IMG/VR virus record: IMGVR_UViG_3300027759_006101
Coordinates: 1-64,000 of that record
DNA length: 64,000 nt
Strand: one strand, 5' to 3'
In this document: piece after piece, positions 40,446 to 60,701 of the stretch
How positions within the stretch are numbered: the first letter of the stretch is position 1
Layout: the number at the start of each line of letters is the position of its first letter
Notes under the pieces: generated by a model
What the model saw: the letters and a program-made list of their open reading frames with translations, nothing else
The model's database searches: none
What the model was told of the DNA's origin: nothing
Position numbers and translations under genes: made by a program

Positions 40446-41300
40446 TTAGCTTACGGTAATTCTTGAAACTGCATAGTCATTGATGAGCGCAAAACCGAGC
40501 TCTTCGTAAACAACCCATCCAAGTCTAAGTCTCTTTGGATCGTCTGCTGGGAGAACAGTAATGTCTTGGCGAACTGGCATTGCACCAACGAATTGGGCAG
40601 GAGCAAGAACGTAAACACTGTTCTTTGGAACCATTGTGGAGACATGGATGTCTGCGGAATAAATATGTCCGTAGAGACCAGTCATAAGGATATCTCTTTG
40701 AGTTGCCTCATCGAAGAATTCCTTACCCCAGTTTCTGATATCCTTGTATCTTTGCGGGTGAAGAACAACCTTAGCGCCGATTAACTCGTGCTCTTCGATG
40801 AGGGTCAACGCAAGGTTGACGTTCTCTGGTTGAAGAGTACCAGAAACGGAGATTGATTGGTCAGTTGGAACACCAGCATTGATGACCTTGAAGACTTCAG
40901 TATCTTCTTGTCTTTGGAGGGAGTCCTTAGCACGGACTTGAGCTCTATCGACGATGTAGAATCTTCTTTGGCGAATCTCATTGAGTCTGATCTGTGGATG
41001 AGCAGCCAACTCAATGGTTGGAACAAGAAGCTCTTCTGCTTCAACTTCTGCAGCAGGAACAGCACCACGCTTAGGAATAACGTATGACTTTACAGCCACG
41101 TCTCTCTCATAGCGAGCTAAAGCACCTTGTGGGAGCTCATCGACCATAAGAAGCTTACGGCCAATTGCTTGGTACATAAGGGAGGTCTTGATTGGCTCAA
41201 CCATTGCTTGTGCAAGTGCTGTGCGTCCCTCTGGAGTCTCAAGAGCCATTGCAATAATGGACTCTCTTTGCTCATTTGTGTTTCTCTTAATCATTGACAT
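40446..41300 (-). CDS. Major capsid protein, HK97 fold
   Basis: 284 aa, last gene of the head operon, AGGAG SD; VVLHPQRYKDIR, GLYGHIYSADIHVS and GWVVYEELG fit the HK97 A/P-domain pattern. Confidence 0.85.
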   Translation of the reverse strand: MSMIKRNTNEQRESIIAMALETPEGRTALAQAMVEPIKTSLMYQAIGRKLLMVDELPQGALARYERDVAVKSYVIPKRGAVPAAEVEAEELLVPTIELAAHPQIRLNEIRQRRFYIVDRAQVRAKDSLQRQEDTEVFKVINAGVPTDQSISVSGTLQPENVNLALTLIEEHELIGAKVVLHPQRYKDIRNWGKEFFDEATQRDILMTGLYGHIYSADIHVSTMVPKNSVYVLAPAQFVGAMPVRQDITVLPADDPKRLRLGWVVYEELGFALINDYAVSRITVS

Positions 41301-42019: not shown

Positions 42020-43708
42020 CTAATCCTCGAGTTTTGGCATTGTCCAAGTGCCCTTGAGAGCACCTTGGATGTCAAGAGCTGCACTGTTAGAAGCAAAGCT
42101 TCCGTGGAATGCAGGGGATGTAGATACGCCTAAAGTTGAAGCAGTTTTTGTCATTTTTTCTGCAGCAGCAGCAGCGACTCTTTCAGTTGATGTTTGTGCA
42201 GACTTGAGTAAAAGTTTAGTTTGTCTAATCATTGAATCTGCTTTCAAGCCATCATTAAGCATTTGCTCTGCATATGAATCTACTTCGTCAGAAGTGATAA
42301 TTCCTGCAAGTGCAAGTTTAGATGCACAACCATAAGATGTTTTGATTCTAGCTAAGTCGAGTGAACTAGCGGCTAATTCTTTTCCAACATCTTGTGTCAT
42401 TTTATTGACTTCAATCGCTGTGTTTTTACCTTGTTGCATAGTCATTGATGCATCACCGATTTGTTTTGTATCAATTGTTGCAGATGCTTTTTCCATATCA
42501 TGGTCTTTGCCAGATTCTTTGTTGGTTGGACAGTCGTTATTTGCACATCTGGTAGAATCTCTTTCCATTTCTTCATCAGACATAGACATTCTTGTACCGC
42601 AAGAAGTGCACTCAACTGTGTTTTTCTTGTCTTTCTCAGCAATTCTGTTGTTACCAGCATTTGCACGAGTGGTCTTGTGTGGCATATTTGGCATTTGAGT
42701 TGGAACTTCAAAAAGATTTGCATCTTCAAGTCCCTCTGATGGATTCTCGAGAGATTCCCAATTAACAACGTACTCTAATGAGCCATCGCCTGAACCTTCA
42801 AACTTCATAGGCTTTGTTACATCTGGAAATTGAAGTGAATCTGGGTTGTTTGTAGGAACTCTTTGCTCAGCCCAGCTTGGGTTTTGCTCTTTGAGTGAGT
42901 TGCCTTCGCCACCCTCAAAACTCATTGAAGGGTAATCGATTTCACCTTCCATATTAACCATATCTTCGTTGTATTTGAATGTGCTGTGCGCTGGATATGC
43001 CTCTTCTTCAGCAGCGAGCTTCATAAGAATTTCTTCTCTTTCTGCTCTTCTTAAAAGGGCTTCTCTTTGTGCCTTGCGCTCAGCTAATGCTTGTTTAGTC
43101 ATATTTCTAACCTCATTGCTGTTTTTTGTAAATTTTTCAGTATTTTCATCTTCAATTTCATCTTCATCATCAGAATCCATATCTTCCATGTCATCCATGT
43201 CTTCCATTTCATCTTCTGAAGAATCTAAATCTCCGCCAAGAAGATTATCTAGCGCCTCTTGCACAGCTTTTTGTGCTTGATCAACCATATCAGCGGGAAC
43301 TTCAATTTCAAAAGTTGCTACATCGTCACTTTCATCTGCTTCGTCACTGTCTTCCATGTCATCATCTGACATCTCATCATCATCTTCATCAAGTTCTTCT
43401 TCATCACTTTCAAAGTGATGAAATTCCATTTCTTCATCGTCGGATTCATCGTTTGCGAAGTCAACAGTCTCTTTGCCATCCTCTAAATCTAAACCAGCAA
43501 GCTTTATTCCGGCTTGTTTAGCAATATTAGGAAGATACTTTGCTCTGATTGCACTTGCCACAACTACAGCTTCATCATCATTCAATGATGCAGTTCTAGC
43601 CATATCATTTGTACATTGAACAAAATCTTCTTTGTCTGTTGCTTGAATTTCTGCCAATTTTAAAGCTGCAAATTTAGCATTTTCGGCATTTTTCGAATTT
43701 TTATTCAT
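42020..43708 (-). CDS. Putative capsid scaffolding protein
   Basis: Between protease and decoration/MCP; long D/E tract, Zn ribbon (CTSC..C..C), Ala-rich C-terminus, multiple KxAS-like motifs. Confidence 0.6.
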   Translation of the reverse strand: MNKNSKNAENAKFAALKLAEIQATDKEDFVQCTNDMARTASLNDDEAVVVASAIRAKYLPNIAKQAGIKLAGLDLEDGKETVDFANDESDDEEMEFHHFESDEEELDEDDDEMSDDDMEDSDEADESDDVATFEIEVPADMVDQAQKAVQEALDNLLGGDLDSSEDEMEDMDDMEDMDSDDEDEIEDENTEKFTKNSNEVRNMTKQALAERKAQREALLRRAEREEILMKLAAEEEAYPAHSTFKYNEDMVNMEGEIDYPSMSFEGGEGNSLKEQNPSWAEQRVPTNNPDSLQFPDVTKPMKFEGSGDGSLEYVVNWESLENPSEGLEDANLFEVPTQMPNMPHKTTRANAGNNRIAEKDKKNTVECTSCGTRMSMSDEEMERDSTRCANNDCPTNKESGKDHDMEKASATIDTKQIGDASMTMQQGKNTAIEVNKMTQDVGKELAASSLDLARIKTSYGCASKLALAGIITSDEVDSYAEQMLNDGLKADSMIRQTKLLLKSAQTSTERVAAAAAEKMTKTASTLGVSTSPAFHGSFASNSAALDIQGALKGTWTMPKLED

Positions 43709-43854: not shown

Positions 43855-46800
43855 TTAGTCAATCCAAGTAATTGAGACATCCAATTTTGATGGATCTTTT
43901 TTGCTTGTTTTTACAGATGTTCTAGAATAGTTTCCACAGCTATGGCAGAAAGTATTATTCTTTACTTTATTTGCTTTTCTATTTCCACAACTTGGACAAA
44001 TCATACCGACAGGAAGCATTTTAGATGCTGTTCTGTCAAAGTCAGGCATTGCAGTTTTTAAGTAAACATCTGAATCAACTGTTGCTGAAAGTCTAACCAT
44101 TGTCTTGATTGAGTTTGCAACTGTTCCTAAAGCAGGAGGCGCAGGAGAAGCAGCTGGAACCTCAGTTGGAGCTGTTGCTGCACCAAGGCCCATATCAGGT
44201 CCTAAACCACCAAGGTCTTCAGACTCTGGAGATTCTTTACCCTTGTCACCCATAGATATAAGCTCAATTGATTGAAGAATCTTGTATGTTGTTCCGCAGT
44301 TTTGACAATCTGCATTTGATTCAGAAATATTTACATCATCTGATCCGCAAACTGGGCAAACACTTCCCCAAGGTTTCTTTTCACCTGGCTCTGTCATTGC
44401 ATCAAGATCTGATGTTTCGTTCATTTCTGTACCAGTCATAGCAGAGATTCCTAAATCTCCGCCAATAGGAGCCATAGCGCCTAAATTAGGGTCTACAGGG
44501 CCTGCAGCAGGAGAAGCGGGAGCTGGAGCACCCATAGGAGGAGCTACTTGTGCATATTTAGATAAAACTTCATCTCTTCTATTTTTTCTAGCAATTCTTG
44601 CACCTTCAGTCATTACTACAGGTAATTCTTCAGCAATTACTTCTGCATCCGCATTTTCTTCGTCAACCTTGAAAGTTTTGGATGACATTGTTGAAACTGT
44701 TGCGGTTACATCACCATTTTCTGAAACAACTAAATCAGTAAATGAGAAAGTGTTTGGATCTACTGTAAATCCGTGACCTTGAAGAACTTCCATTGCTTTT
44801 TGTTTGAATGCTTCATCAAAGCTATCGTCTCCAGGAGACATTCCGTTCAAATCTTCAGCAACGCACATAAATCTAAGGCAATCTGATTTTGTGTGTGTAA
44901 CAGTCATTCCAGCAGTTCTGTCTGCTTCTTGTTTTGCTTCAATAGCTCTTGAAACTAATTTTTCTGCCAAATCGAAATCTTGGCAAAGTCTTTTTGCTGC
45001 TAATGCAATTTTGCGAGTTGGAATATTGAAGTTTGTTGAATAATCAGCAAGCCATCCAATCAAATTATTCTCAATTTTTTCTGCACTGGCAGTCTTGACT
45101 CCCCAAAACTCTCTTCTTGCTCTAGATCTTAATCTACCTTCAGTTGCAGTGGTGGTTTTTGCTCTATCAATTGCTGCCATAAGTTGTTTTTCTGGCATTG
45201 AGTCAACGACATCAACACCTTCACCTGGTGCAGTTCTTGTTTCTTCAGAGGACATTGCCATAGCACTAATTGCAGATTTCAAATCGTCTTTAGAAATTAA
45301 GTCACCAGCTCCGTCTACAGCTGATCTAAGCGCTGATCTGAGTTCTTCATTCTTTGAAGGTTGAGTATCAACATCAAGGCCAGTTTCAGGAGCAGCAGCC
45401 CCAGCCATCAAAAGTTCTGCAATTCTAGTGACACCTTCTTTGGTGATTTCGCCTTCTTCAACAGCAACCGAAAGTGCTTGCGAAAGGTCTTGAGCAGTTA
45501 CTTCTGAAGTTACAGCAGCGCCTAATTGTTTGAGGACAGCTGTGACTGGATTATCAACAGAAGATTGTCCAAAAAATTCTTCTTTCTCAGTATTTGCTGC
45601 ATCCATTTCTGTACCAGCAGCAGCAGTTCCAATCATTTCTGGAAGCATTGGTTCTTCAGATAAAACTTGTGCAACTCTCAAAATTGTCTTTGGAGTTTCA
45701 AACGAAGAAACAACTGCTTTGCCTAATGCTTCAATTGTCTTGACCATGATAAGTTGTGCAGGAGCACTTCCTTCAGATCTGTGCTTAGAAAGTCTATTTT
45801 CTAAAACTTCAGTTGGAACACCCTTAGTTACTTCATCAACAAGTTCAGTCAGAGATTTTCTAACTTCATCATCCTTGACTCTTCTTCCATAAAGTCCAGC
45901 TTTACCAAGTAAAATTTCCTTGACAGCTTCGGCACCTTCGCCTGTTCTTTTAGTATCAAGTTGTTGTTCTTTGCCAACAGTAGGAGCACCAGTATTTTTA
46001 GTTTTCACACCGTCTTGTAAATTACTATATGACTCACCAGATCTTACTTCTTCTAAAAGACTTTCTCTGTCGCCATCTCTGTCCTTAACATCAAGTAAAG
46101 CTGTTCTGACAAATGATGAATAATCTTTTAACAGTTCTGCAGCAACTCTTGTGCCTTGTCCTGATTCCATCATAGAAATTTGATTTTCATTGAGGATAGG
46201 TTCCCAAGAAGTTCTTTTACCATTAGTAAATCCGGTTATCGATCCATCAGTTGAAAGAACAACTCTATTACCCGCACTGTCTTCAACCTTAAAATCGATT
46301 GTGACAGCAGCAGCTAATTTTTTTCTTTGCTCTGATGCAATCTTAGCAAAATGATCCATTTGATTTCTGCTCCCCGCCTCTATAGGCTTGTTTGTTTTTA
46401 TGTTTTTATTTCTCTCATTAGCAATTCTAATGACATTTTGAATACTTTGATTGACTTGTTCTACGTTATTCAAATTATTTTTTAAACTCAGAATACTTTG
46501 TGCAAAGTTTCCAAATTTATCAACAGTTTTATGATTTGTACTTGCAAAAACTTCTCTTCTACCATCTTTAGAAGCCCAAACTAAATTATAGTTTGTAGAT
46601 GCTAATGCAACTCCACTTCCAATAGGATTTGGATTACTGAAGTTAGTCATATCCATAACTTTTCCAACTGATTCAGTTGGAGAATAATTAGCTAAACCAA
46701 TTTGTGGGCTTGCCATTTGTTGCGATGGATTTGGTTGTGCAGCTTGTGGCATACTTTGAGGTTGATTTATTGGCTGTGGTCTTTGACCACTACCAACGTC

Positions 46801-47994
46801 AACTCCATCGTCGATCATGTCTTGCATAGTAGACTGAAGTTCAGCCATTGACTTAGTGATTTTGCCTACGTGTCCTAAATCAACATTGTCTTTACGTGCA
46901 AACATATTCATTACAGCAACTTCTAAAAAGTTCAAAGAAAGATTGATAAGATCAAGAATGTTAAGGCCAGATCTTGGATCAATTCCTAAGGCTCCCAAAA
47001 CTGCTGCAACTGTTGAATTTTGATTAGCTCCCTGACCAGCTAATAGTTGTCCGCCAACTAATGTGCCTGCTTGTTGTGCAAGTCTGATAGCAACATTGGT
47101 AGTTTGATTTGCTTGTCTCAAACAGCTTTCATATGCTGTTCTTTCATTAATATTTTCAGGGATTTCTTGTAAAGCTAAAACAATATTTGAATTTATTTCA
47201 TTAGCTTTCTTTTCTAAATTTGTTGCTGCACTTAAAACGTCATCAACATCATAAATTTCTTGAATTTCACAAGACTCAAAAGCACCATCACCTACACAGC
47301 TTAATTCTATAAACTTAACTCCATAGTTTTTTTCATAAGCTTTCTTGCCGGTTTCAGGATAAGTCTTGCCTTTATATTTTTTCAAGTGCTCACAATAGTC
47401 TCTTTCAGTATAGGCTTTATTGTTACAAATGGAACAAACGCCCCACTCAACACTTGCACCCATACTTACATCGTGAATAACACCTGTTCTAATATTTCTT
47501 GCGATATCAGGATATGCTTCCTCATCTACAAAGAAAGTACAGTAAACACAGTTTTCTTTTTCGTCCCATTCAGCGTAAACAACCATTCCTTTAGCTTGTT
47601 CAATATCATCATTTTTATGATTTGTATATATTGGAACACCTTCGAAAGATTTATATGCTGGGATTTTTTGACCTTTTAATTCAACTTCTTTAAGTAATTC
47701 TTCTTTAGAAAACAAGTCACCGTTTGCATTAACAACGTCTGCATCAATTGCTCTGGCTCTTACCCAAAGTAATTTAGCACCTTTACGAGCTTGCATTTCT
47801 TTAACGATATCAAAATCTTTGTATTTTTCTAATACTTCTTTAGGATCAGCATAGAGTGATTGTAAACCAATTTTTGCTGCTTCCCTCATATTTGAAGAAG
47901 CAGTTTTTATTAAGTGCTCTCTTGCCGCAACTCTGTCGTTTTCATTAAGAAAACTTTGCACAGTTATAGCACCACCTTTTGCAACTCTATACAT
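43855..47994 (-). CDS. Prohead (maturation) serine protease polyprotein with a long C-terminal extension
   Basis: N-terminal NANGDLF...YTNH...GMV...IRTGVIHDVSMG...IELSCV assemblin/HK97-like domain; ~1100 aa extension ending in two CxxC pairs. Confidence 0.75.
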   Translation of the reverse strand: MYRVAKGGAITVQSFLNENDRVAAREHLIKTASSNMREAAKIGLQSLYADPKEVLEKYKDFDIVKEMQARKGAKLLWVRARAIDADVVNANGDLFSKEELLKEVELKGQKIPAYKSFEGVPIYTNHKNDDIEQAKGMVVYAEWDEKENCVYCTFFVDEEAYPDIARNIRTGVIHDVSMGASVEWGVCSICNNKAYTERDYCEHLKKYKGKTYPETGKKAYEKNYGVKFIELSCVGDGAFESCEIQEIYDVDDVLSAATNLEKKANEINSNIVLALQEIPENINERTAYESCLRQANQTTNVAIRLAQQAGTLVGGQLLAGQGANQNSTVAAVLGALGIDPRSGLNILDLINLSLNFLEVAVMNMFARKDNVDLGHVGKITKSMAELQSTMQDMIDDGVDVGSGQRPQPINQPQSMPQAAQPNPSQQMASPQIGLANYSPTESVGKVMDMTNFSNPNPIGSGVALASTNYNLVWASKDGRREVFASTNHKTVDKFGNFAQSILSLKNNLNNVEQVNQSIQNVIRIANERNKNIKTNKPIEAGSRNQMDHFAKIASEQRKKLAAAVTIDFKVEDSAGNRVVLSTDGSITGFTNGKRTSWEPILNENQISMMESGQGTRVAAELLKDYSSFVRTALLDVKDRDGDRESLLEEVRSGESYSNLQDGVKTKNTGAPTVGKEQQLDTKRTGEGAEAVKEILLGKAGLYGRRVKDDEVRKSLTELVDEVTKGVPTEVLENRLSKHRSEGSAPAQLIMVKTIEALGKAVVSSFETPKTILRVAQVLSEEPMLPEMIGTAAAGTEMDAANTEKEEFFGQSSVDNPVTAVLKQLGAAVTSEVTAQDLSQALSVAVEEGEITKEGVTRIAELLMAGAAAPETGLDVDTQPSKNEELRSALRSAVDGAGDLISKDDLKSAISAMAMSSEETRTAPGEGVDVVDSMPEKQLMAAIDRAKTTTATEGRLRSRARREFWGVKTASAEKIENNLIGWLADYSTNFNIPTRKIALAAKRLCQDFDLAEKLVSRAIEAKQEADRTAGMTVTHTKSDCLRFMCVAEDLNGMSPGDDSFDEAFKQKAMEVLQGHGFTVDPNTFSFTDLVVSENGDVTATVSTMSSKTFKVDEENADAEVIAEELPVVMTEGARIARKNRRDEVLSKYAQVAPPMGAPAPASPAAGPVDPNLGAMAPIGGDLGISAMTGTEMNETSDLDAMTEPGEKKPWGSVCPVCGSDDVNISESNADCQNCGTTYKILQSIELISMGDKGKESPESEDLGGLGPDMGLGAATAPTEVPAASPAPPALGTVANSIKTMVRLSATVDSDVYLKTAMPDFDRTASKMLPVGMICPSCGNRKANKVKNNTFCHSCGNYSRTSVKTSKKDPSKLDVSITWID

Positions 47995-48117: not shown

Positions 48118-50499
48118 TTATAAATATTTTTCACCATCTCCATTTGAACTTTGACCTGTACGTTTTTTAATTGCATTTATCAAGACGTTCAAACAATCTT
48201 GAGGATGATCTTGTAGCTCTTTATCAGTAAATCTAATTATAATCCAACCATTGACTGCTAATTCTGAATCTCTTCTCTTATCTTTAGCAATTTTATCTGG
48301 ATTGTTGTGCCAAATTTCTCCATCTGCTTCAACACCAATTTTCAAGTTTGGAATTGCTCCATCCAATTGATAATCCATTGTTGGACCAGCTGAATATTGA
48401 GCATAAAGTGGGAAAGGCATATTCAATGACATCAATAATCCATATAATTTCTTTTCTAAAGACGTAAACATCTTTGGTTGATTAATGTTTTCTAATTTTT
48501 TTGCAATAACCTGTCTGATAGATTCATTTTTGTTATTTGCATAATGATGCATTTCATTCATAGCATAATTATTCAATGGGTAAGAAAGCGAACCGCCAAT
48601 AAACGGTGTATCAATTACTCCAAAAAGACCATCATACTCAACTGGCAGAGGGCCTAAATTAGCTCTACCAGTAACAGGTTTCAGACTCATTAAGAAAGCT
48701 TCGTGAGCTGAAGATTTTATTTTCTTACTTGCGGTTCTAATTTTATCTGATTTATTTAAGTCGTCTAGTCTATTTTGATATATACTATTTACAATGTCTG
48801 ATGCGAGCCTATAATTTTCAAGCATAGATTTTGCTGTAGGCGCTGGAGCTTCTGGCATTGGGGCCGGAGGAGCTGCTCCAGCTGGAGAAGCACCAGGAGC
48901 TCCACCAACACCAAGGTCTGGTGCAGGAGGGGCTGCGCCCATGTCTGCACCTCCAGATGCGCCAAACCCTTGACCTGTTACGCCACCACTTTGAAAACTT
49001 AATGATATATTTGGTGTTCCAAAACTTTGGTCGCTCATAAAATTAGCGCCTTGTTCATATCTAAGTCTTTCAATTTCTTGGTCAGAATCAAGACCAAATG
49101 CTTCAATCAAGGAAACATTTGAAATTACACCATTCTGATTTGCTGTTACAAGCATCTGCAATTTGCCAGTGTCGTCTCTTAACTGCAGGTCATCAAATTT
49201 AATACGTGGATAAACAATTTCTTCTTGCCCACGTTCTCCTTCAATAACAAATCCATTCCATTTTGCAACGGGCATGAAAATATTCATTTCTACCCAGTGA
49301 GCAACTTCTCTTCGGAATGTTTCTAGTCTTTGAGCCATTGCAAGAAGACCAACTTGAGCGTTTCCGTAAGTAGGTCCTTCACCATTCAACAAGGCTTTAT
49401 TAAGCATGACACCATCAAGAATTTCTTGTTCGATAAGTTCAAATTCACCAGTCAAAGGGTGAATTTTTCCAGTTGCACCATACCACTCTAGATCAAAGTT
49501 ATGGTGAGTAACAAGAGTTAGGTTTGGATCATTCGCAATTGACGCTAATTCATCTTGAACATTGTCGATGTCTTCTTGAGATGCTGGTCTTGTATCGCTA
49601 CCAATCTTTACAACTTTGATTGGTAAAATAAGGCGTTCAGCAATCATATACTGAGCTTGTCTCAGTTTATCTTTGTATGTCAAAATTGGGAATAATGGTC
49701 TTATCATAGAGATGCCATAATCTTCCCAAGGATTTGAACCATACTTAAAGTGATGTATGGAAATCTGGTTTAATTTGATAGGATCGCCCTTGAGAATAAG
49801 TTTCTTAATTCCGTCTGGGATAGAATCATAAATATCTTTAGGATGTCTTTCGTTTACAATTCGGATTTCTTCAGCAGACGGTCTGTAAGCATAGCTACCC
49901 TGCTGGTCAATCATCCCTGGAGTCTTAATTACATTATCAGGGTTTAAAATAGAAATGGATTTCCAAGAAGCTCCATCGTGTTGACATTCTTGATTTTTAT
50001 CTTCGTCCCAGTTTGAACCGTGGCAGTGAGGGCAATCAATAGATAACAGAACAAAAGCATCACCTAATAAATGATATACTTTTGAAATTTCAGGAAGCCA
50101 TTTTTGAAAATTAAGTTTTTCTACTAATTTTTCAAAATAATCTTTAACGTAAGAAGATGAACATTCTAATTTCCAACCAGAGAATGGATAATTGGTATAG
50201 AAGTTAATTGCTGCAGAAACTTTTGGTTCATTGTTCTTCCACCAGTTTGCCCATAGATACACTTCACGTCGAGCATTTGGGATTTGAAATGAAGATGGAG
50301 TAAGGAATGGAGAATAGAAGTTAGGAGCAGTTGTGATAGAATTGATACTGGCAGATCTTGTAACACCAGGACCTAATCCTAAGCCAATACGACTACTTGC
50401 ATATGCTTGTTTTGATTCTGAAGTGGCTGTACTAGTCGAGCCTGAAACTTGTGTTGCTGCTGTTCTAATAGCAGATGCAAGAGATGTTTTTGTTGCCAT
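48118..50499 (-). CDS. Portal protein fused to a C-terminal DUF559/Vsr-like endonuclease
   Basis: Portal-like core (KVSAAINFYTNYP, YHLLGDAF, HHFKY...PWEDYGISMI, IKFDDLQL), P/A/G linker, then FTSLEKKL...QY...LDGAI...VEADGEIWH...DKRRD..L..NGWIIIRF. Confidence 0.8.
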   Translation of the reverse strand: MATKTSLASAIRTAATQVSGSTSTATSESKQAYASSRIGLGLGPGVTRSASINSITTAPNFYSPFLTPSSFQIPNARREVYLWANWWKNNEPKVSAAINFYTNYPFSGWKLECSSSYVKDYFEKLVEKLNFQKWLPEISKVYHLLGDAFVLLSIDCPHCHGSNWDEDKNQECQHDGASWKSISILNPDNVIKTPGMIDQQGSYAYRPSAEEIRIVNERHPKDIYDSIPDGIKKLILKGDPIKLNQISIHHFKYGSNPWEDYGISMIRPLFPILTYKDKLRQAQYMIAERLILPIKVVKIGSDTRPASQEDIDNVQDELASIANDPNLTLVTHHNFDLEWYGATGKIHPLTGEFELIEQEILDGVMLNKALLNGEGPTYGNAQVGLLAMAQRLETFRREVAHWVEMNIFMPVAKWNGFVIEGERGQEEIVYPRIKFDDLQLRDDTGKLQMLVTANQNGVISNVSLIEAFGLDSDQEIERLRYEQGANFMSDQSFGTPNISLSFQSGGVTGQGFGASGGADMGAAPPAPDLGVGGAPGASPAGAAPPAPMPEAPAPTAKSMLENYRLASDIVNSIYQNRLDDLNKSDKIRTASKKIKSSAHEAFLMSLKPVTGRANLGPLPVEYDGLFGVIDTPFIGGSLSYPLNNYAMNEMHHYANNKNESIRQVIAKKLENINQPKMFTSLEKKLYGLLMSLNMPFPLYAQYSAGPTMDYQLDGAIPNLKIGVEADGEIWHNNPDKIAKDKRRDSELAVNGWIIIRFTDKELQDHPQDCLNVLINAIKKRTGQSSNGDGEKYL

Positions 50500-50527: not shown

Positions 50528-51055
50528 TTAGAACCAAGTTTGATTAGATGGAAGTTGTCCGAAGAGTTTTGGATCTTGTTTGCCACTTAATGCTTGTGTA
50601 TAACCTTCACCATTCTTTAAGTGCAAAAATCCTTCACCTTTTTTGTAAGCATTAGAATCTGCTGGACTGACATTATTGTTTTGTTGCCTTGAGCCATCTA
50701 AAAGATTTTCAAGAGTAGTTTCTTCAGGGTTGGAGTGATGTTCAGAATGTCTTCTCGCTTCATTGGATGCTGACTGTGGACCAGTAATAAATTGACCATT
50801 ATTGTCCATATTCATTCTATGAGGTCTCTTTACAAGTAACTCCCAAATTTCTGCCTGCTGCTCTTTTGTCATATGATAATAATCATCGACAGTTTTGTTC
50901 ATTTTTTTAAGAATACCAGGTAGTTCATCGTAAAGACCTTGTGGCTGATTGTCAATATCTTTAACAATGTCAATTCCGGCATTTTGCTCATTAGTAGATT
51001 CATTTCTTGAAAAATCTACTCCACCGCCAAATGATACGACTTTTCTATACCACAT
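50528..51055 (-). CDS. Hypothetical head-associated protein
   Basis: 175 aa, starts MWYRKVVS. Confidence 0.65.
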   Translation of the reverse strand: MWYRKVVSFGGGVDFSRNESTNEQNAGIDIVKDIDNQPQGLYDELPGILKKMNKTVDDYYHMTKEQQAEIWELLVKRPHRMNMDNNGQFITGPQSASNEARRHSEHHSNPEETTLENLLDGSRQQNNNVSPADSNAYKKGEGFLHLKNGEGYTQALSGKQDPKLFGQLPSNQTWF

Positions 51056-52628
51056 CGTCGTATTCTTCTCTTTTAGATTGCATTACATAATCTAAGCCGA
51101 GTTCATTTGCAAAGTTTTTAAGATCGTCTTCAGAAAATTGATGACCCCAATCATCATCATCAGTATCACTCAATAGTTGTTCGATACTTTTGTCATTTTT
51201 GTTGTTTTGTCTATGGGATTCTAATTCTTCTTCTTTTGAATCTTCGCTAACTTTCTTTGATGCAGATATATTTTTATTGAGTAAATTACTTACTGACTCT
51301 TTAGGCTCAGCTTTATTTTTATTGAGTTCATTTCTATAATTCTTTGGTTCTTTGCTATCAAGCAGTTGTTCAGCGTATGATTTCTCCATTTCGCCTTTTC
51401 TTGAATAAAGACCATCTTCGAGTTGTTCTTCTCGAGTAGTCTCAGTATCAGAATCTACATCATTGAGTTTTCTTAATAAAGCCTCAAGATAGTCACTACC
51501 GCTTTGCTCTTCTCTAGGTAATTGAGAATCTATAGTTTTCATAGAATCAGATTGAGCTTGCTTTGGTCTTAGAACAGGTTTACTACCTTGCTGATGGCCA
51601 TAACTTGACTCTTTTGTCTCAGAAAGTTGTTTTTCTCTAGAGTCTGATTCGTTATGTTTACCTCTAACTTTATTTGCGCCTCTATCAGAATTCTCAAATC
51701 TTGCTTCAAAACCAACTTCACCGTCAGTCAGTTTTTTAGATCTTTCACCTTCAGCAAGATTAAGTAAATTGGCTTCATTATCAGGATGCCTATGGACATC
51801 AAGTTTGCCCATAACTTGATCATGTGATTGGAAAGCTGTTTTCATCCAGTCAGCATATGCACAAGTCACAGTTCCATCTTTACCAATTCTTGAGTCAATG
51901 CAGTTTTCTCTACACTTAGAAATCTCCATTGGTACAGGGCCTTTACCTTGAAGTTTTCCTTTAGGGCATAAAAGATAAGGCTCATTGTCTTGTGTTGATA
52001 ATGTAGTGTATGCAACTCTTTTCATTTCAGATGGAGTTATGCTTGAAAATGTCTGTTTTACTTTTTCGGCAACTTCTGATACGGCTTCTTTGTTGCCAGA
52101 AAGAACTAAAGTTCTTGCTTTATCTAAAAATGATTTAGAAATAACATTATCAGCAAATCTATACAAATTATCTAAAGAATTAATGGACTCAATCTGCCAA
52201 TATCCAGTAGATTTGTCTTCTTTTTTGTATGCAACTCTTTCAAATTTAACAGCAGAGGATTCTTTGTTTAAAAAACTTTGAAGAGACACGTATGCATATC
52301 TTAGAAGATTTCTTTGTTGTGCTAATTTGATATTATTTAATGTTTTGTATGCGCTATGAACTTTTGATGCTGGTAAAGCAACAATAATTTCAGGTCCACC
52401 CATTGACTTAAAGCTATTTGTTATAGGATCGTCACCAAAATCATCAGCACTTAAAACATGAAAAGGAGAAGAGTGTGGAATTCTTTCTCCATCACCAACA
52501 TTTGACAAAGTATCTTGGAGCATTTGCAACAATCCCATACCGCCAATCTTGGAATTCCCCAAAATTTTCTCAACTTTGTTTGGATCGTGTGTTTCATACT
52601 TAGTAGTGATTTTGTATCCGTGTTCCAT
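51045..52628 (-). CDS. Hypothetical head-associated protein with a Cys cluster and repeated ExQL motifs
   Basis: 527 aa; LLCPKG...CRENC...C; KLAQ and RVAY x2. Confidence 0.65.
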   Translation of the reverse strand: MEHGYKITTKYETHDPNKVEKILGNSKIGGMGLLQMLQDTLSNVGDGERIPHSSPFHVLSADDFGDDPITNSFKSMGGPEIIVALPASKVHSAYKTLNNIKLAQQRNLLRYAYVSLQSFLNKESSAVKFERVAYKKEDKSTGYWQIESINSLDNLYRFADNVISKSFLDKARTLVLSGNKEAVSEVAEKVKQTFSSITPSEMKRVAYTTLSTQDNEPYLLCPKGKLQGKGPVPMEISKCRENCIDSRIGKDGTVTCAYADWMKTAFQSHDQVMGKLDVHRHPDNEANLLNLAEGERSKKLTDGEVGFEARFENSDRGANKVRGKHNESDSREKQLSETKESSYGHQQGSKPVLRPKQAQSDSMKTIDSQLPREEQSGSDYLEALLRKLNDVDSDTETTREEQLEDGLYSRKGEMEKSYAEQLLDSKEPKNYRNELNKNKAEPKESVSNLLNKNISASKKVSEDSKEEELESHRQNNKNDKSIEQLLSDTDDDDWGHQFSEDDLKNFANELGLDYVMQSKREEYDDVV

Positions 52629-52630
52629 AA

Positions 52631-53497
52631 TTAATTTCCTAACCCAAGCATTGACAATTCTTCTTTATCAAATCCTCTGTCAGTTAATGCTTTTTTGATT
52701 TCTGCCAATTCTTCTTTAGCACCCTTTTTATTTGCTGGATCCTTGAAATCACCTTGAGGAGTTGACTTACTGTAATCAAGTAAATCCATCAAGAAACAAG
52801 CTCTTAAAATTAATTCTGAAGTAGATCTTTTGTGGAAATTTGGAGATTCGTCATAATTCAAAGATGCAGTTTTGACAGCTTCTTTTTTTGAATCTTCTTT
52901 TTCGTCTTTATCGTCATCTTTTTTTAGTTTCCTGTTATAATCTTTGACGATATCTACCGCACGTTCAATTGTTTCTTTATTCCAATACTTAAGCTTGGCA
53001 ATATATCTTACAATATCGTTTTTCTCTACACCGTGATCTAGAAGTTTTCCAACCTTGCCCATCAAAACTCTGAATGGATTTCCACGAGTTTTTTTCTTTT
53101 TCTTTTGTGCTGCTCTTGAATTATTGTACACTTTGTCTTCCTTCTTAGATGTGATATAGAGTTCATATATTTCTCTACCAATATCTTGATAAGTAGGGTC
53201 CAATTCACCTGTAAGTGGGTCTTTAGTTCTAGTTCTTCCACTATTAGAATGCATTAATGCTTTAGATAATTTATCAAGTTTATGTTTAAGATTTTCATCA
53301 ACAATTCTTACGCTTACATTTGCAACTTGATCTGCCATTACTTGAAAATCGTCTTTACATGCTAATACTTCTTGCAGTAAAGTTTGCAATTCTGATTCTG
53401 TAACGCCTTCAATTTGTTCCCCTCCAAGTGGAATATTATTGATTCCATTTGCAGGATTTGATGCTAATGCCGGTCCTTCAGAATTGTTTGGTTCCAT
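52631..53497 (-). CDS. Hypothetical head-associated protein
   Basis: 288 aa; basic KKKKKTRGNPFRVLMG segment; VKTAS. Confidence 0.65.
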   Translation of the reverse strand: MEPNNSEGPALASNPANGINNIPLGGEQIEGVTESELQTLLQEVLACKDDFQVMADQVANVSVRIVDENLKHKLDKLSKALMHSNSGRTRTKDPLTGELDPTYQDIGREIYELYITSKKEDKVYNNSRAAQKKKKKTRGNPFRVLMGKVGKLLDHGVEKNDIVRYIAKLKYWNKETIERAVDIVKDYNRKLKKDDDKDEKEDSKKEAVKTASLNYDESPNFHKRSTSELILRACFLMDLLDYSKSTPQGDFKDPANKKGAKEELAEIKKALTDRGFDKEELSMLGLGN

Positions 53498-53499
53498 TT

Positions 53500-54306
53500 T
53501 TATCTTAAGTCTAAATCAATATTGTTGTAAATGTCAGAAACAGTTTGCGCTCTATTTTTAGATTTTTCTATCATTTGATCTTGAAAATTCTTTTGTATGG
53601 AGAGTCTTTCATTTCTAACACGGTCTTGGTTAGCAATACGCATACTTTCTCTTTGGTCTAAACTTTCAGGATCAATCATTCCAAATGTTGAGTTGAATTC
53701 ATTATCTGATGAAGTTCTCAAAATAGAATGAGCTCTGGAATTAACAACATTTGCTTTCTTAATTTTGTTAATGTTTTTCTCTTCCCAAGATTGATGCCTA
53801 GATGCTTTAGCTTCTCTCAATCTTTGTTGTTCTACAACTGCTTGTTCAGTTGTTGATTCTTGGGAATTCAAAAATTCTTTTGAAATTGAAATCATATCAG
53901 GATTGAAAATATTAGAAGATCCTCTGAGCATACAATCCATATATTCCTCAGATGAATATGCCTTCAAACCACTTGTTGTAGTTCTTGCACTTTCACCGTC
54001 ATCATAAAAAGAACCTGATCTCTTAATAGCAGAAAAATCTTGTGCTAAAAGTCTATCTTCTACAGTTTCTTGTCTTAAGTCATTGTAAAGAGATGGGCCG
54101 GAAATTTTTTCCCATGATTTGCTGAAAGAATTAGCTTCTTTAGTAAATCCTATGTTTTGCTTAGAAATTTTCATTCTATTTTCAGCAGAATTCATTCTCA
54201 ATTCAGCATATGGGTCTTCTTCAACTTCAACTTGAGCACCAACAAATTTTTTCTCTAAAAAACTTGGTATATTTTCAATTTCTGATACTTTTTTAAATCT
54301 ACTCAT
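53500..54306 (-). CDS. Hypothetical head-associated protein
   Basis: 268 aa, starts MSRFKKVS. Confidence 0.65.
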   Translation of the reverse strand: MSRFKKVSEIENIPSFLEKKFVGAQVEVEEDPYAELRMNSAENRMKISKQNIGFTKEANSFSKSWEKISGPSLYNDLRQETVEDRLLAQDFSAIKRSGSFYDDGESARTTTSGLKAYSSEEYMDCMLRGSSNIFNPDMISISKEFLNSQESTTEQAVVEQQRLREAKASRHQSWEEKNINKIKKANVVNSRAHSILRTSSDNEFNSTFGMIDPESLDQRESMRIANQDRVRNERLSIQKNFQDQMIEKSKNRAQTVSDIYNNIDLDLR

Positions 54307-54333
54307 TTTTTCATCCTTAATTTATTCAAGAAT

Positions 54334-54357
54334 GTCCCAAGGCCTAAACCTTGGGAC
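54334..54357. terminator. Stem-loop between 54374-55408 and 53500-54306
   Basis: GTCCCAAGG-CCTAAA-CCTTGGGAC. Confidence 0.65.
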
Positions 54358-54373
54358 TTTTCTTCTTGAGGAA

Positions 54374-55408
54374 TTAATTTTTCTTGTCGTATTTCTTGGT
54401 AAATAAGGCGTCGATCCAATCTTGGTCGCCATAGCCTAAATCATTTTTCCAATAATCAATGAGTCTTGAATAATCAGCATCAGAAAGTGTTGCTGTCTTA
54501 ATCATTGATGACGCTGCAGCAATCTTAGTACTGTGATCGAGCTTTGATGCTAAAACACTTCTGATTTTTGCTGTATTGTCAACCTTTTTAGTAGCAACTT
54601 CGCCAATTCTTGCTTGGATATACTCAACTGGGAAACCCTCTGCAAGAGCCTTTTGTGCAAAAGCTGTTTTCATAGCAGGAGTCATTCCAGAATTTTGAGT
54701 CTTTCTAGATGCAGTCTTAACTGGTTGTGGTTGAACTGATTGCTCTTCAACACTTTGAACAAGTGCTTCTCTGTAAGCTCTTCTTTGTGCTAATCTAACA
54801 GACTTTTCTTTTTCAGAAGCAATTCTTGTTTCAATTTGTGAAGCAAGTCTGATTCTTCTGTCGTGTCTAGCAGCAAGAATAGCACTCTTTAAGTGCTCAT
54901 CGCCAGCAGCTTCTGCAGCTTCAACTGCTTCTGCGGAAAGTTGTGAAGGATGGTTGAAGACATATGCTTTCTTAACTTTCTCATCTTTCTTAGGACCTTT
55001 TCTCTTCATCGGGCCCTTTGCATGATCTTCGTGATCTTCTTCTTCTTCGTCTTCGTGATCTTCGTCTTCGTGATCTTCAGATTTGTTTTTCTTGCCTTTC
55101 TTGTTCTCTTCAAGCCACTTAGCTAAGCCAGGATTAAGGCCTTTCTTAGCCATTTTGGTTGAATTGTGATACATAGATTCATCTTCCACATCTTCATTTG
55201 CGTAAGAAGAACCAGCTTCTTGTAACATATCAACCTTTTCTTTGCCAATAGAGTCTAAGAGTGCTTTAAGACCTTTATCTTTGTCTTCCTCACCATTTTC
55301 AGCAGCTGCTAATCTTTGGTTAAAGTTATCCCAGTCAATTCCTTGAAAAACAAGGTCAGAATCAAGAGGGTCTTCTTGATATCTGTTTGGGAAAATTCTA
55401 TCTGCCAT
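54374..55408 (-). CDS. Highly charged head-associated (scaffold-like) protein
   Basis: 344 aa; DHEDE repeats; RLAS, RLAQ, KTAS, KTAT; GAGGAG SD. Confidence 0.65.
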   Translation of the reverse strand: MADRIFPNRYQEDPLDSDLVFQGIDWDNFNQRLAAAENGEEDKDKGLKALLDSIGKEKVDMLQEAGSSYANEDVEDESMYHNSTKMAKKGLNPGLAKWLEENKKGKKNKSEDHEDEDHEDEEEEDHEDHAKGPMKRKGPKKDEKVKKAYVFNHPSQLSAEAVEAAEAAGDEHLKSAILAARHDRRIRLASQIETRIASEKEKSVRLAQRRAYREALVQSVEEQSVQPQPVKTASRKTQNSGMTPAMKTAFAQKALAEGFPVEYIQARIGEVATKKVDNTAKIRSVLASKLDHSTKIAAASSMIKTATLSDADYSRLIDYWKNDLGYGDQDWIDALFTKKYDKKN

Positions 55409-55448
55409 AATTTTGTTTTCTCCTCAAGAAAAAATACATTAAAAAAAC

Positions 55449-55475
55449 TTCTTAAATTTAAAGGGTAATTCCTTT
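55449..55475 (-). promoter_or_regulatory. Putative late promoter AAAGG-N18-AGAA
   Basis: AAAGG AATTACCCTTTAAATTTA AGAA. Confidence 0.7.
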
Positions 55476-55482
55476 AATGCAT

Positions 55483-56358: not shown

Positions 56359-56368
56359 AATAATCTCC

Positions 56369-56809: not shown

Positions 56810-56810
56810 T

Positions 56811-60637: not shown

Positions 60638-60643
60638 TTACTC

Positions 60644-60650
60644 ATTATAC
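60644..60650 (-). promoter_or_regulatory. GTATAAT -10 box 6 nt before the TerS-candidate ATG
   Basis: TTGTATAAT GAGTAA ATG. Confidence 0.55.
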
Positions 60651-60652
60651 AA

Positions 60653-60686: not shown

Positions 60687-60701
60687 AATTTCAAGATATA
60701 A

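What the first reader, a model, noticed from the sequence alone, without database searches (positions are those of the whole stretch)
43855..47994. 1379-aa protease-scaffold polyprotein
The catalytic-type His (YTNH, ~47618) and Ser (DVSMG, ~47465) sit in the first ~250 aa, with a CxxC..CxH zinc insertion. They are followed by ~1100 aa of helical, Q/P-rich and P/A-rich segments separated by KxAS-type sites, ending in two zinc ribbons. A separate scaffold gene follows. The layout recalls herpesvirus protease-scaffold fusions and is far larger than typical phage prohead proteases.
Basis: partly seen in the sequence, partly recalled or inferred. Interest (0 to 1): 0.6.

Follow-up and report, generated by a model that had tools for sequence, protein, structure and literature searches.

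The report
Giant nested protease-scaffold gene, jumbo phage
This 1379-residue gene of an uncultured 358-kb phage starts with a capsid-maturation protease of the T4 gp21/herpesvirus type and carries a conserved internal ribosome-binding site and start codon. It therefore probably makes both a protease fusion and a separate 834-residue scaffold-like protein, the herpesvirus UL26/UL26.5 and lambda C/Nu3 arrangement at about four times the usual size.

Summary
The ORF (43855-47994, minus strand, 1379 aa) is real. It lies between the portal and major capsid genes of a 358-kb IMG/VR phage record.

- **Protease:** residues 68-249 fold as a prohead serine protease. The best structural match is T4 gp21 (Z 10.4), followed by herpesvirus assemblins (Z 8-10). 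H126 and S177 align with gp21 H85 and S140. In 6 of 17 distant relatives an intein sits two residues after S177.
- **C-terminal part:** the remaining ~1100 aa (helical regions, Q/P and P/A linkers, two Cys4 zinc ribbons) has no detectable sequence or fold relatives outside its own family. Its layout is nevertheless conserved down to about 30% identity, on contigs up to 441 kb.
- **Internal start (new):** invariant Met546 is preceded by GGAG 10 nt upstream in 68 of 70 related loci. The GGAG falls in three different codon registers, and no other conserved Met has one. This implies a nested 834-aa product.
- **Candidate cleavage motif (new):** [KR]-T-A-S occurs 10 times in the head module against 0.3 expected. 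Some sites are positionally conserved, which points to a herpes-like Ala|Ser cleavage motif.

The scaffold function and the cleavage itself remain inferred. Comparably long protease fusions exist in cultured Bxz1-like mycobacteriophages, so I rate this a new variant of a known kind.

The parts
43855..47994 (-). Full-length ORF, 1379 aa, 149 kDa: protease-scaffold-like fusion (P0001)
   Evidence: More than 200 full-length homologues of 1367-1440 aa. The same architecture is found in 74 IMG/VR loci.
47248..47793 (-). Prohead serine protease domain, residues 68-249 (T4 gp21/herpesvirus assemblin fold)
   Evidence: phrog_18299 'head maturation protease' E 3.7e-20. AF2 pLDDT 80-93. Foldseek top hits are the KSHV protease and T4 gp21. 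VIA-align gives 5jbl Z 10.4, rmsd 3.0, 129 aligned, 25% identity, and herpes proteases Z 8-10.
47617..47619 (-). His126, predicted catalytic His
   Evidence: Invariant in all alignments. Aligns with T4 gp21 His85 by hhalign.
47464..47466 (-). Ser177, predicted catalytic nucleophile
   Evidence: Invariant. Aligns with gp21 Ser140. In 6 of 17 distant relatives an intein is inserted right after Gly179.
47287..47289 (-). Asp236, candidate third catalytic residue (inferred)
   Evidence: Nearly invariant in the family and conserved in actinophage homologues. Its equivalence to the gp21 Asp is my reading of the strand-V-x-D-x-A pattern and was not produced by an aligner.
47386..47436 (-). Zinc-knuckle insertion in the protease domain (C187, C190, C201, H/C203)
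   Evidence: Ligands are conserved in the family and in Cali gp93 and Pupper gp94. The insertion is absent from T4 gp21.
46795..47247 (-). Conserved helical region, residues 250-400 (long helical hairpin plus a Gly-rich hydrophobic stretch)
   Evidence: Conservation map. AF2 helices 250-312 and 346-396. Only generic coiled-coil matches.
46360..46794 (-). Q/P-rich and variable linker, residues 401-545. This is the least conserved and most gap-rich part, and it ends at the internal start.
   Evidence: pLDDT below 50.
46370..46373 (-). Internal Shine-Dalgarno GGAG, 10 nt upstream of the Met546 ATG
   Evidence: Read directly. GGAG/GAGG is present at -17..-5 in 16 of 16 aligned relatives and in 68 of 70 loci, in three codon registers. 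Background is 4.8% of codon positions. It is near-identical to the MCP gene's RBS.
46357..46359 (-). ATG of Met546, predicted internal translation start
   Evidence: Met is at this column in 16 of 18 diverse homologues and within 1-2 residues in the other two. It is the only one of 11 conserved Met columns with an SD.
43855..46359 (-). Nested in-frame ORF Met546-Asp1379 (834 aa, 88.9 kDa, pI 4.8): predicted scaffold/core-like product
   Evidence: AF2 model of 455-1379.
47896..47907 (-). K30-T-A32|S33, candidate cleavage site (N-terminal propeptide)
   Evidence: Present in 23 of 23 close and 7 of 18 diverse homologues.
46333..46344 (-). K551-I-A553|S554, candidate release-type site 8 residues after Met546
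   Evidence: Present in 16 of 23 close and 9 of 18 diverse homologues; the others have KIAQ.
45085..45096 (-). K967-T-A969|S970, best-conserved candidate cleavage site
   Evidence: [KR]xAS is present in 22 of 23 close and 15 of 18 diverse homologues, within an otherwise poorly conserved stretch.
44023..44034 (-). R1321-T-A1323|S1324, candidate maturation-type site 56 residues from the C-terminus
   Evidence: Weakly conserved at this exact place. 8 of 23 close relatives have a site at about 1315 or 1323, and 6 of 18 diverse ones at about 1341.
44914..45759 (-). All-helical domain, residues 746-1027
   Evidence: AF2 pLDDT 80-90. No significant fold match.
44665..44904 (-). Small alpha/beta domain, residues 1031-1110
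   Evidence: AF2 pLDDT 70-80. Best Z is 7.1 to the Rpb7-like N-domain, which is within the noise level the tool states.
44275..44367 (-). Zinc ribbon 1 (C1213, C1216, C1230, C1233)
   Evidence: All four Cys invariant. Zn-ribbon Pfam hits are below their cut-offs.
43858..44100 (-). C-terminal domain with zinc ribbon 2 (C1333, C1336, C1350, C1353) and a conserved terminal strand ending ..ITWID
   Evidence: pLDDT 70-84.
48118..50499 (-). Portal protein (793 aa) with a C-terminal DUF559/MTES_1575 endonuclease-like domain, upstream neighbour
42020..43708 (-). 562-aa very acidic protein (pI 4.2) with a zinc ribbon. It is a candidate separate scaffold/core protein. It has [KR]xAS sites at 38-41 and 521-524.
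   Evidence: The site 39 residues from the C-terminus is conserved in 13 of 17 orthologues. No family hit.
40446..41300 (-). HK97-fold major capsid protein, 284 aa
   Evidence: phrog_2522 E 4.8e-68. NF042927 E 2.2e-56.

Best explanation
The gene is a nested protease-scaffold gene of a jumbo phage head-assembly module. Translation from the first ATG gives a 149-kDa fusion. Its N-terminal 250 residues are a serine prohead protease of the T4 gp21/herpesvirus assemblin fold (His126, Ser177, probably Asp236), carrying an inserted zinc knuckle. A conserved internal Shine-Dalgarno site and ATG (Met546) most likely also give an 89-kDa product that shares the fusion's C-terminal 834 residues. I infer that this shorter product is made in excess and builds, or takes part in, the internal core or scaffold of the procapsid. 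The full-length form would co-assemble through the shared part and so carry the protease inside, as in herpesvirus UL26/UL26.5, lambda C/Nu3 and HFTV1 gp17/gp17.5. After shell assembly the protease would cut head proteins, itself included, at [KR]-x-Ala|Ser sites. In this protein those lie after residues 32, 553, 969 and 1323. That would free the protease part (33-553) and split the scaffold part into pieces. What is shown here: the ORF, the protease fold and catalytic register, conservation of the architecture, the conserved SD+ATG, and the enrichment and positional conservation of the motif. What is inferred: use of the internal start, cleavage at the motif, and the scaffold/core role.
For: - **Position:** the gene order is portal, this gene, acidic 562-aa protein, 217-aa protein, MCP. 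This matches the T4 order 20-21-22-23 and is syntenic in 17 relatives.
- **Protease:** PHROG head maturation protease E 3.7e-20. AF2 gives pLDDT 80-93 over residues 70-245. Foldseek and VIA-align put T4 gp21 first (Z 10.4) with herpes assemblins at Z 8-10. hhalign places H126 on gp21 H85 and S177 on S140. Inteins are inserted two residues after S177 in 6 of 17 relatives.
- **Nested start:** GGAG lies 10 nt upstream of the invariant Met546 and closely resembles the MCP gene's RBS. Of 11 conserved Met columns this is the only one with an SD, in 16 of 16 sequences against a 4.8% background. 68 of 70 loci keep it, with the SD in different codon registers and different encoded residues. Only 6 of 17 relatives have a strong SD at the primary start. 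The stretch just upstream of Met546 is the least conserved of the protein.
- **Motif:** KTAS is the top tetrapeptide of the head module. [KR]TAS is 19-fold denser in the head module than in the rest of the genome (Fisher 3e-8) and occurs 10 times against 0.3 in shuffles. T4-type x-E motifs are not enriched. [KR]xAS is enriched in the head modules of 13 of 14 relatives, z 3.7-8. Sites are positionally conserved at residue 969 of this protein and 39 residues from the C-terminus of the acidic neighbour.
- **Precedent:** nested protease-scaffold genes and Ala|Ser or Ala|Thr release and maturation sites are described in PMC4498786 and in the HFTV1 preprint 10.64898/2026.09.13.751334.
Against: - There is no experimental datum of any kind.
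- The C-terminal 1100 residues match no known scaffold by sequence or fold.
- A separate acidic protein that looks like a T4 gp22-type scaffold lies immediately downstream. The nested product may therefore not be the main scaffold.
- The closest structural relative, T4 gp21, cuts after Glu, not at Ala|Ser.
- Several motif sites are only partly conserved (site 553 is KIAQ in half of the diverse relatives; site 1323 is poorly conserved). One distant relative (L074) shows no enrichment.
- R-x-A patterns are generally raised in these helical proteins, which may inflate the looser motif.
- The complex prediction of the C-terminal domain with the MCP gave no verdict.
- No Pfam protease family is hit.
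Confidence: 0.6

Rival explanations
1. Protease fused to head cargo rather than to a scaffold. On this reading the C-terminal 1100 residues (and the nested product) are internal head, inner-body or ejection proteins. They would be targeted into the procapsid, trimmed by the protease, kept in the virion, and perhaps bound to DNA through the zinc ribbons or injected into the host. This resembles T4 internal proteins or the processed ejection proteins of phiKZ and SPN3US. The acidic 562-aa neighbour would be the true scaffold.
For: A separate, very acidic gp22-like protein sits in the scaffold position. The C-terminal part contains several compact, confidently modelled domains and two invariant zinc ribbons, which is more than a disposable scaffold usually has. 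Its length and domain order are conserved down to 30% identity. Giant-phage heads are known to hold many protease-processed internal proteins (PMC10052503).
Against: No enzymatic or DNA-binding family is detected beyond generic zinc ribbons. The nested co-terminal gene layout is the hallmark of protease-scaffold pairs. Candidate cleavage sites would chop the product into four pieces.
Confidence: 0.25
2. Only the full-length protein is made. The internal GGAG+ATG would be unused for initiation (for example a translational pause site or a coincidence of linker coding). The long C-terminal extension would simply anchor or meter a few protease molecules in the procapsid.
For: There is no direct evidence that the internal start is used. 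SD-like sequences inside genes can also act on elongating ribosomes. Bxz1-like and Pupper fusions of similar length show no clear independent internal start; the one shared candidate GTG follows an SD-like GAGG that the conserved Glu-Ala codons already explain.
Against: The SD lies at a fixed distance from an invariant Met, in three codon registers, in 68 of 70 loci. No other conserved Met has one. The site closely resembles the RBS of the most highly expressed late gene. It sits exactly at the border between a hypervariable linker and the first confidently predicted helix of the C-terminal part.
Confidence: 0.12
3. Annotation or assembly artefact, or a tail tape-measure protein (as noted in the phage Cali record for the homologous gp93).
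For: The Cali record notes 'tape measure' for gp93. Foldseek against viral models lists tape-measure proteins first for the C-terminal model, but at TM 0.08.
Against: The uninterrupted ORF is seen in more than 200 protein clusters. The identical protein is on 17 independent contigs. The gene lies between portal and MCP. It has a protease fold with intact catalytic residues. TM-scores of 0.08 carry no meaning.
Confidence: 0.01

Closest known systems
Herpesvirus UL26/UL26.5 (assemblin-scaffold fusion plus nested scaffold gene)
   Same: N-terminal serine protease of the same fold (Z 8-10). An in-frame internal start gives a co-terminal product. Candidate cleavage is at Ala|Ser. One site lies close to the protease/scaffold junction (A553|S554, 8 residues after the internal Met; compare the R-site). 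Sites also lie a few tens of residues from the C-terminus (compare the M-site).
   Different: The closest protease relative is T4 gp21, not assemblin. The likely triad is His-Ser-Asp, not Ser-His-His. A zinc knuckle is inserted in the protease. The nested product is 834 aa, against about 330 aa in herpesviruses. There are two zinc ribbons and no sequence or fold similarity in the scaffold part. The P3 preference is Lys/Arg rather than the herpes sites quoted in PMC4498786. The internal start is translational (SD) rather than on a separate transcript.
T4 gp21 prohead protease with gp22 scaffold (and phiKZ gp175, SPN3US gp245)
   Same: Best structural match, with catalytic His and Ser in register. 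Same gene order, with an acidic protein between protease and MCP. Expected processing of several head proteins.
   Different: gp21 is 212 aa and is not fused to a long C-terminal part. gp21-type enzymes cut after Glu, and those motifs are not enriched here. The Pfam model for that family does not hit.
Lambda C/Nu3 and Haloferax virus HFTV1 gp17/gp17.5 nested protease-scaffold genes; P2 gpO fusion
   Same: One reading frame gives a protease-scaffold fusion plus, by internal initiation, a scaffold that shares the C-terminus. In HFTV1 this was shown by ribosome profiling.
   Different: Those genes are a few hundred codons long. The lambda C protease belongs to another protease class (own knowledge). 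None has zinc ribbons or a product of this size.
Bxz1-like mycobacteriophage gp93/gp95 (Cali gp93, 1286 aa), Gordonia phage Pupper gp94 (1082 aa); PHROG 2774
   Same: Same protease domain, including the zinc knuckle (33-36% identity, E 4e-25 to 2e-30). Same position between portal and MCP. A C-terminal extension of about 850-1050 aa.
   Different: The extensions share no detectable sequence similarity with this one. They lack the C-terminal double zinc ribbon by BLAST, and no independent evidence for an internal start was found. In the records they are annotated as hypothetical, 'tape measure' or 'capsid maturation protease'.

Membership tests
Prohead serine protease of the T4 gp21/HK97 gp4/herpesvirus assemblin fold | Characteristic protease fold | tested here: met
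   AF2 model pLDDT 80-93 over residues 70-245. 5jbl Z 10.4, rmsd 3.0, 129 of 165 aligned. Herpes proteases Z 8-10.
Prohead serine protease of the T4 gp21/HK97 gp4/herpesvirus assemblin fold | Catalytic His and Ser in register with a characterised member | tested here: met
   hhalign places H126 on gp21 H85 and S177 on S140. Both are invariant. That H85 and S140 are the gp21 catalytic residues is from my own knowledge. PMC5694885 confirms a His/Ser/Asp triad for gp21.
Prohead serine protease of the T4 gp21/HK97 gp4/herpesvirus assemblin fold | Third catalytic residue | tested here: inconclusive
   Asp236 is conserved and lies in a matching strand context, but the aligners did not carry the alignment across the zinc insertion.
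Prohead serine protease of the T4 gp21/HK97 gp4/herpesvirus assemblin fold | Match to the curated sequence models (Pfam S77/S78/S21 families) | tested here: not met
   No Pfam protease family hit even at E<=1. Only PHROG 18299 and 2774 match, plus a weak NCBIfam prohead protease/MCP fusion hit (E 1.6e-4). Sequence membership is therefore remote.
Prohead serine protease of the T4 gp21/HK97 gp4/herpesvirus assemblin fold | Gene in the head module next to portal and major capsid genes | tested here: met
Prohead serine protease of the T4 gp21/HK97 gp4/herpesvirus assemblin fold | Proteolytic activity on head proteins | not testable with these tools
   Needs expression and assay.
Nested protease-scaffold gene (UL26/UL26.5, lambda C/Nu3, HFTV1 gp17/17.5 type) | In-frame internal initiation site giving a product co-terminal with the protease fusion | tested here: met
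   Met at the sequence level only. The SD+ATG at Met546 is conserved in 68 of 70 loci, in three codon registers, and is unique among conserved Mets. Use of the site in vivo was not tested.
Nested protease-scaffold gene (UL26/UL26.5, lambda C/Nu3, HFTV1 gp17/17.5 type) | Autoproteolytic release and maturation sites | tested here: inconclusive
   The [KR]xA|S motif is enriched and positionally conserved. Cleavage was not observed.
Nested protease-scaffold gene (UL26/UL26.5, lambda C/Nu3, HFTV1 gp17/17.5 type) | C-terminal part binds the major capsid protein and scaffolds the shell | tested here: inconclusive
   Complex prediction of MCP with residues 1295-1379 gave no verdict. There is no homology to known scaffolds.
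PHROG 2774 (long proteins of Bxz1-like and related phages) | Match along the whole 1263-position profile | tested here: not met
   Only profile positions 21-208, the protease domain, match. BLASTP against Cali gp93 and Pupper gp94 aligns the protease domain alone.

The most novel reading that the evidence does not exclude
The 834-aa nested product would be a previously unrecognised class of giant, zinc-ribbon-bearing core protein peculiar to very large capsids. It would not be a throw-away scaffold. It would be an organiser that sets capsid size or stays inside as a DNA-organising inner structure. It would be processed by a gp21-like protease that has independently acquired herpes-like Ala|Ser specificity and a UL26/UL26.5-like gene plan.
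Probability: 0.15. Interest if true: 0.75.

Novelty: new variant of a known kind. Interest (0 to 1): 0.55.

Why it matters
How capsids of T number around 25-30 and above are built to the right size is poorly understood, and most jumbo phages of this clade are uncultured. This gene gives a concrete, testable handle:
- a protease with predicted catalytic residues;
- a predicted second translation product;
- a predicted cleavage motif that also flags likely substrates: the portal, the acidic neighbour, and at least four further proteins of unknown function in the head-gene cluster.

It also extends the phage-herpesvirus parallel. A gp21-like enzyme here carries the herpes-type gene plan and a herpes-like Ala|Ser motif. 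The protease domain is shared with Bxz1-like mycobacteriophages, which are cultured, so the general idea of a giant protease fusion can be tested at the bench. For annotation, several database labels on homologues ('tape measure', 'LysM-like endolysin', 'ssDNA-binding Zn-finger topoisomerase 1', 'translation initiation factor') are probably wrong.

Tried and rejected
- **Sequence searches of the C-terminal part:** Pfam, PHROGs, NCBIfam and PDB sequence searches gave only sub-threshold zinc-ribbon hits.
- **PDB search with the N-terminal profile:** nothing useful.
- **Fold searches of the 455-1379 model:** no meaningful match in PDB Foldseek, BFVD (tape-measure rows at TM 0.08), the PDB-wide VIA search (best Z 7.1 on an 80-residue alpha/beta domain, within noise) or the ESM Atlas. 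I do not claim new folds.
- **Word search with the isolated protease domain:** found only fragments of the same family.
- **Complex prediction of MCP with residues 1295-1379:** no verdict, so this is no evidence either way.
- **Link to the freshwater bS21-encoding Bacteroidetes jumbo phages (PMC9723584):** the own genome has no bS21. Only one of five large relatives has one, about 45 kb from the protease gene. The link is not established.
- **Sigma-70 promoter and terminator scan of the gene:** no more sites than in shuffles, so there is no evidence for an internal promoter.
- **T4-type cleavage motifs ([LIV]xE, AxE, [AGS]xE):** not enriched.
- **Paralogy between the acidic neighbour and the nested product:** only the zinc ribbon aligns, E 0.008.
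- **Internal start in the actinophage homologues:** one shared candidate GTG (Cali residue 707, Pupper residue 532), but its SD-like GAGG is explained by conserved Glu-Ala codons, so it is a lead only.
- **Literature:** searches found no description of this gene family.

Full report
**Context.** The window is the first 64 kb of a 358,269-bp IMG/VR virus record, linear and estimated 89% complete. GC content is about 33%, so this is an uncultured jumbo phage. The minus strand between 40.4 and 60 kb holds a head module:
- large terminase, 57846-59957;
- eight ORFs of unknown function;
- portal, 48118-50499, with a Mu-type portal core plus a C-terminal DUF559/MTES_1575 endonuclease-like domain;
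- the ORF in question, 43855-47994;
- a 562-aa protein, 42020-43708;
- a 217-aa Gly/Ala-rich protein;
- a 284-aa HK97-fold major capsid protein (MCP).

This order is kept in 17 relatives examined. It parallels T4 genes 20, 21, 22 and 23.

**The observation.** The His, Ser, zinc-insertion, linker and zinc-ribbon coordinates are all correct. The protein is not an assembly accident. The word search found more than 200 full-length homologue clusters of 1367-1440 aa. The identical protein lies on 17 independent contigs from several samples. A scan of IMG/VR returned 74 loci, on contigs up to 441 kb, with the same architecture down to about 30% overall identity.

**The N-terminal domain is a prohead protease.**
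- Residues 52-242 match PHROG 18299 'head maturation protease' (E 3.7e-20) and the first 200 positions of PHROG 2774. No Pfam protease model is hit.
- tblastn against cultured phages finds only this domain. It matches Bxz1-like mycobacteriophages and Gordonia and Rhodococcus phages at 33-36% identity. It also matches, more weakly, the annotated prohead proteases of Erwinia, Dickeya and Burkholderia jumbo phages.
- An AlphaFold2 model built on 28 family members is confident over residues 70-245 (pLDDT 80-93).
- Foldseek ranks the KSHV protease and T4 gp21 first (probability 0.99).
- VIA-align gives T4 gp21 Z 10.4 (rmsd 3.0, 129 of 165 residues, 25% identity) and herpesvirus proteases Z 8-10.
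- Profile alignment to T4 gp21 puts His126 on His85 and Ser177 on Ser140. These are the catalytic residues of gp21 by my own knowledge. A His/Ser/Asp triad for gp21 is stated in PMC5694885.
- Both residues are invariant in every alignment, including the actinophage homologues.
- Asp236 is my candidate for the third residue. This is inference, because the aligners did not bridge the zinc insertion.
- The insertion (C187, C190, C201, H/C203) is shared with the actinophage proteins and absent from gp21.
- Independent support for Ser177 being the active site comes from inteins. Six of 17 distant relatives carry a 380-425-aa intein exactly after Gly179, and inteins characteristically sit in active sites.

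**The C-terminal 1100 residues.** Conservation mapping on 18 diverse homologues and a second AlphaFold2 model give this layout:

| Residues | Feature |
|---|---|
| 250-400 | conserved helical region |
| 401-545 | Q/P-rich, hypervariable linker |
| 546-563 | helix |
| 568-595 | small beta unit |
| about 640-740 | weakly modelled helices |
| 746-1027 | confident all-helical domain |
| 1031-1110 | small alpha/beta domain |
| 1126-1149 | conserved basic helix |
| about 1150-1203 | P/A linker |
| 1210-1240 | zinc ribbon 1 |
| 1241-1298 | second linker |
| 1299-1379 | terminal domain with zinc ribbon 2 |

None of this matches a known family or fold with any confidence. The models were too large for a fair single-domain search, so I do not claim new folds. 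A profile of this part, searched against 1.84 billion representatives, found 248 clusters. Beyond the ~1400-aa family, these include proteins of 1500-2700 aa. Of five of these that I scanned, three begin with the same protease domain, one of them with an intein; the other two gave no family hit. Long protease fusions are therefore a broad but uncharacterised superfamily. Cali gp93 (1286 aa) and Pupper gp94 (1082 aa) show the same plan in cultured phages, although their extensions are not alignable with this one.

**A conserved internal start.**
- Met546 is the only residue conserved across the otherwise hypervariable linker.
- The DNA upstream reads GGAG, then 10 nt that are A-rich, then ATG. 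This is almost the same as the ribosome-binding site of the MCP gene.
- The phage clearly uses Shine-Dalgarno sites for its late genes.
- Among the 11 Met columns conserved in the family, only this one has GGAG or GAGG at -17..-5. It does so in 16 of 16 sequences, against 4.8% of codon positions generally.
- Across all IMG/VR loci that cover the region, 68 of 70 keep it.
- The encoded residues differ (AGS, AEG, TGD, TGG, KEE, KEK, PGG and others) and the GGAG falls in three different codon registers. The constraint is therefore on the nucleotides, not on the protein.
- By contrast, only 6 of 17 relatives have a strong SD at the primary start.

The simplest reading is a nested gene giving an 834-aa, 88.9-kDa product that shares the fusion's C-terminus. 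This is the arrangement known from herpesvirus UL26/UL26.5 (PMC4498786). It is also known from phage lambda and, by ribosome profiling, from the archaeal virus HFTV1 (preprint 10.64898/2026.09.13.751334). Use of the site in vivo is inferred.

**A candidate cleavage motif.**
- In an unbiased scan of all tetrapeptides in the 18 head-module ORFs (7,679 aa), KTAS ranks first: 7 seen, 0.17 expected, Poisson 7.5e-10.
- [KR]TAS occurs 10 times there and 7 times in the other 102,901 aa of the genome, a 19-fold difference (Fisher 3e-8).
- Composition-preserving shuffles give 0.3 expected. With this protein left out the figures are 7 seen against 0.2 expected.
- T4-type motifs ending in Glu are not enriched.
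- The looser [KR]xAS is enriched in the head modules of 13 of 14 relatives, z 3.7-8.
- The sites are positionally conserved where it matters. Residue 969 of this protein keeps the motif in 15 of 18 diverse and 22 of 23 close homologues, inside a poorly conserved stretch. Residue 32 keeps it in 23 of 23 close homologues, and residue 553 in 16 of 23.
- In the acidic neighbour, a site 39 residues from the C-terminus is kept in 13 of 17 orthologues. In the portal, a site between the core and the endonuclease-like domain is kept in 8 of 13.
- The MCP and the 217-aa protein have none.

By analogy with assemblin, which cuts at Ala|Ser or Ala|Thr, I propose cleavage between Ala and Ser. That would give fragments 33-553 (57.5 kDa, protease part), 554-969, 970-1323 and 1324-1379. 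This is inference. Two caveats apply: R-x-A is generally raised in these helical proteins, and some sites vary.

**Mechanism and rivals.** I commit to the nested protease-scaffold model at about 0.6 overall. My rough confidence by component:

| Component | Confidence |
|---|---|
| Protease | about 0.95 |
| Internal start used | about 0.7 |
| Ala\|Ser motif | about 0.5 |
| Scaffold/core role | about 0.5 |

- **Main rival (about 0.25):** the C-terminal part is retained head cargo and the acidic 562-aa protein is the real scaffold. The compact domains and invariant zinc ribbons favour this. The nested co-terminal layout and the multiple internal sites argue against it.
- **Single-product reading (about 0.12):** this has to explain away the register-independent SD.
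- **Artefact or tape-measure readings:** excluded for practical purposes.

**Novelty.** Nested protease-scaffold genes and protease-scaffold fusions are textbook. Long protease fusions exist unremarked in cultured actinophages. What is new here is the combination:
- a gp21-like protease with a zinc knuckle;
- a nested product about four times the usual size, with two zinc ribbons and no known relatives;
- a herpes-like Ala|Ser motif that marks a set of probable substrates.

All of this is found in a large clade of uncultured phages with genomes of up to 441 kb (most of the contigs seen are fragments). I rate it a new variant of a known kind, interest 0.55.

**Limits.** Everything beyond sequence and predicted structure is inference. 

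Noticed in passing
L068, L069, L070, L073, L074, L075 (about 8.5 kb into each locus); also proteins P0064, P0082, P0114, P0142, P0218: A 380-425-aa intein (Hint plus LAGLIDADG, PF14528/PF14890) is inserted in the protease gene exactly after the Gly of DVSMG, two residues after the catalytic Ser. It is present in 6 of 17 distant relatives and absent from the window's copy.
   Followed up: partly
window 48118-50499 (-): The portal protein carries a C-terminal DUF559/MTES_1575 (Vsr-like endonuclease fold) domain at residues 673-783. An R-T-A-S site at 588-591 lies between it and the portal core, so the domain may be clipped off during maturation. An endonuclease-like domain on a portal is unusual.
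   Followed up: partly
window 42020-43708 (-): A 562-aa protein of pI 4.2 with long Asp/Glu runs (about residues 75-190) and a Cys4 zinc ribbon (about 366-392). It has a [KR]xAS site 39 residues from its C-terminus that is conserved in 13 of 17 orthologues. It has no family hit and is a candidate gp22-like scaffold.
   Followed up: partly
window 40446-41300 (-) and orthologues in L041-L073: The 284-aa HK97-fold capsid protein has no delta domain and is 75-97% identical among relatives whose protease fusion is only 30-70% identical. This is an unusually conserved, small MCP for capsids that hold 260-440 kb.
   Followed up: no
window 50528-57800 (-), 59957-61415 (-) and 61590-64334 (+): Ten ORFs around the terminase and portal have no PHROG hit. 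Four of them (288, 344, 237 and 914 aa) each carry one K-T-A-S site, which marks them as possible head proteins processed by the protease.
   Followed up: partly
L076 (Cali gp93), L077 (Pupper gp94), hits H1/H2 (Gordonia phage Skog): Database labels on homologues look wrong or inconsistent: 'tape measure' note on Cali gp93, 'LysM-like endolysin' on Skog, and JGI names such as 'ssDNA-binding Zn-finger topoisomerase 1' and 'translation initiation factor 1'. Cali residue 707 and Pupper residue 532 share a GTG preceded by GAGG, which could be an internal start there too.
   Followed up: partly
G000 outside the window (rest of the 358-kb genome): The tetrapeptides GFAT, FATT and ATTA (27-36 copies), QSGY (22) and MWYR (9) are hugely over-represented in the remaining proteins. 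This points to large families of repeated or paralogous proteins elsewhere in the genome.
   Followed up: no
L078 (G003:C1:86284-86439): One large relative (347 kb) encodes a ribosomal protein bS21 gene about 45 kb from its protease gene. The window's genome and three other large relatives do not.
   Followed up: partly
window 47541-47550 and 47269-47298 (-): Four further Cys (C149, C152, C233, C242) in the protease domain are invariant in this family but absent from the actinophage homologues. They may form a second metal site or disulfides.
   Followed up: no
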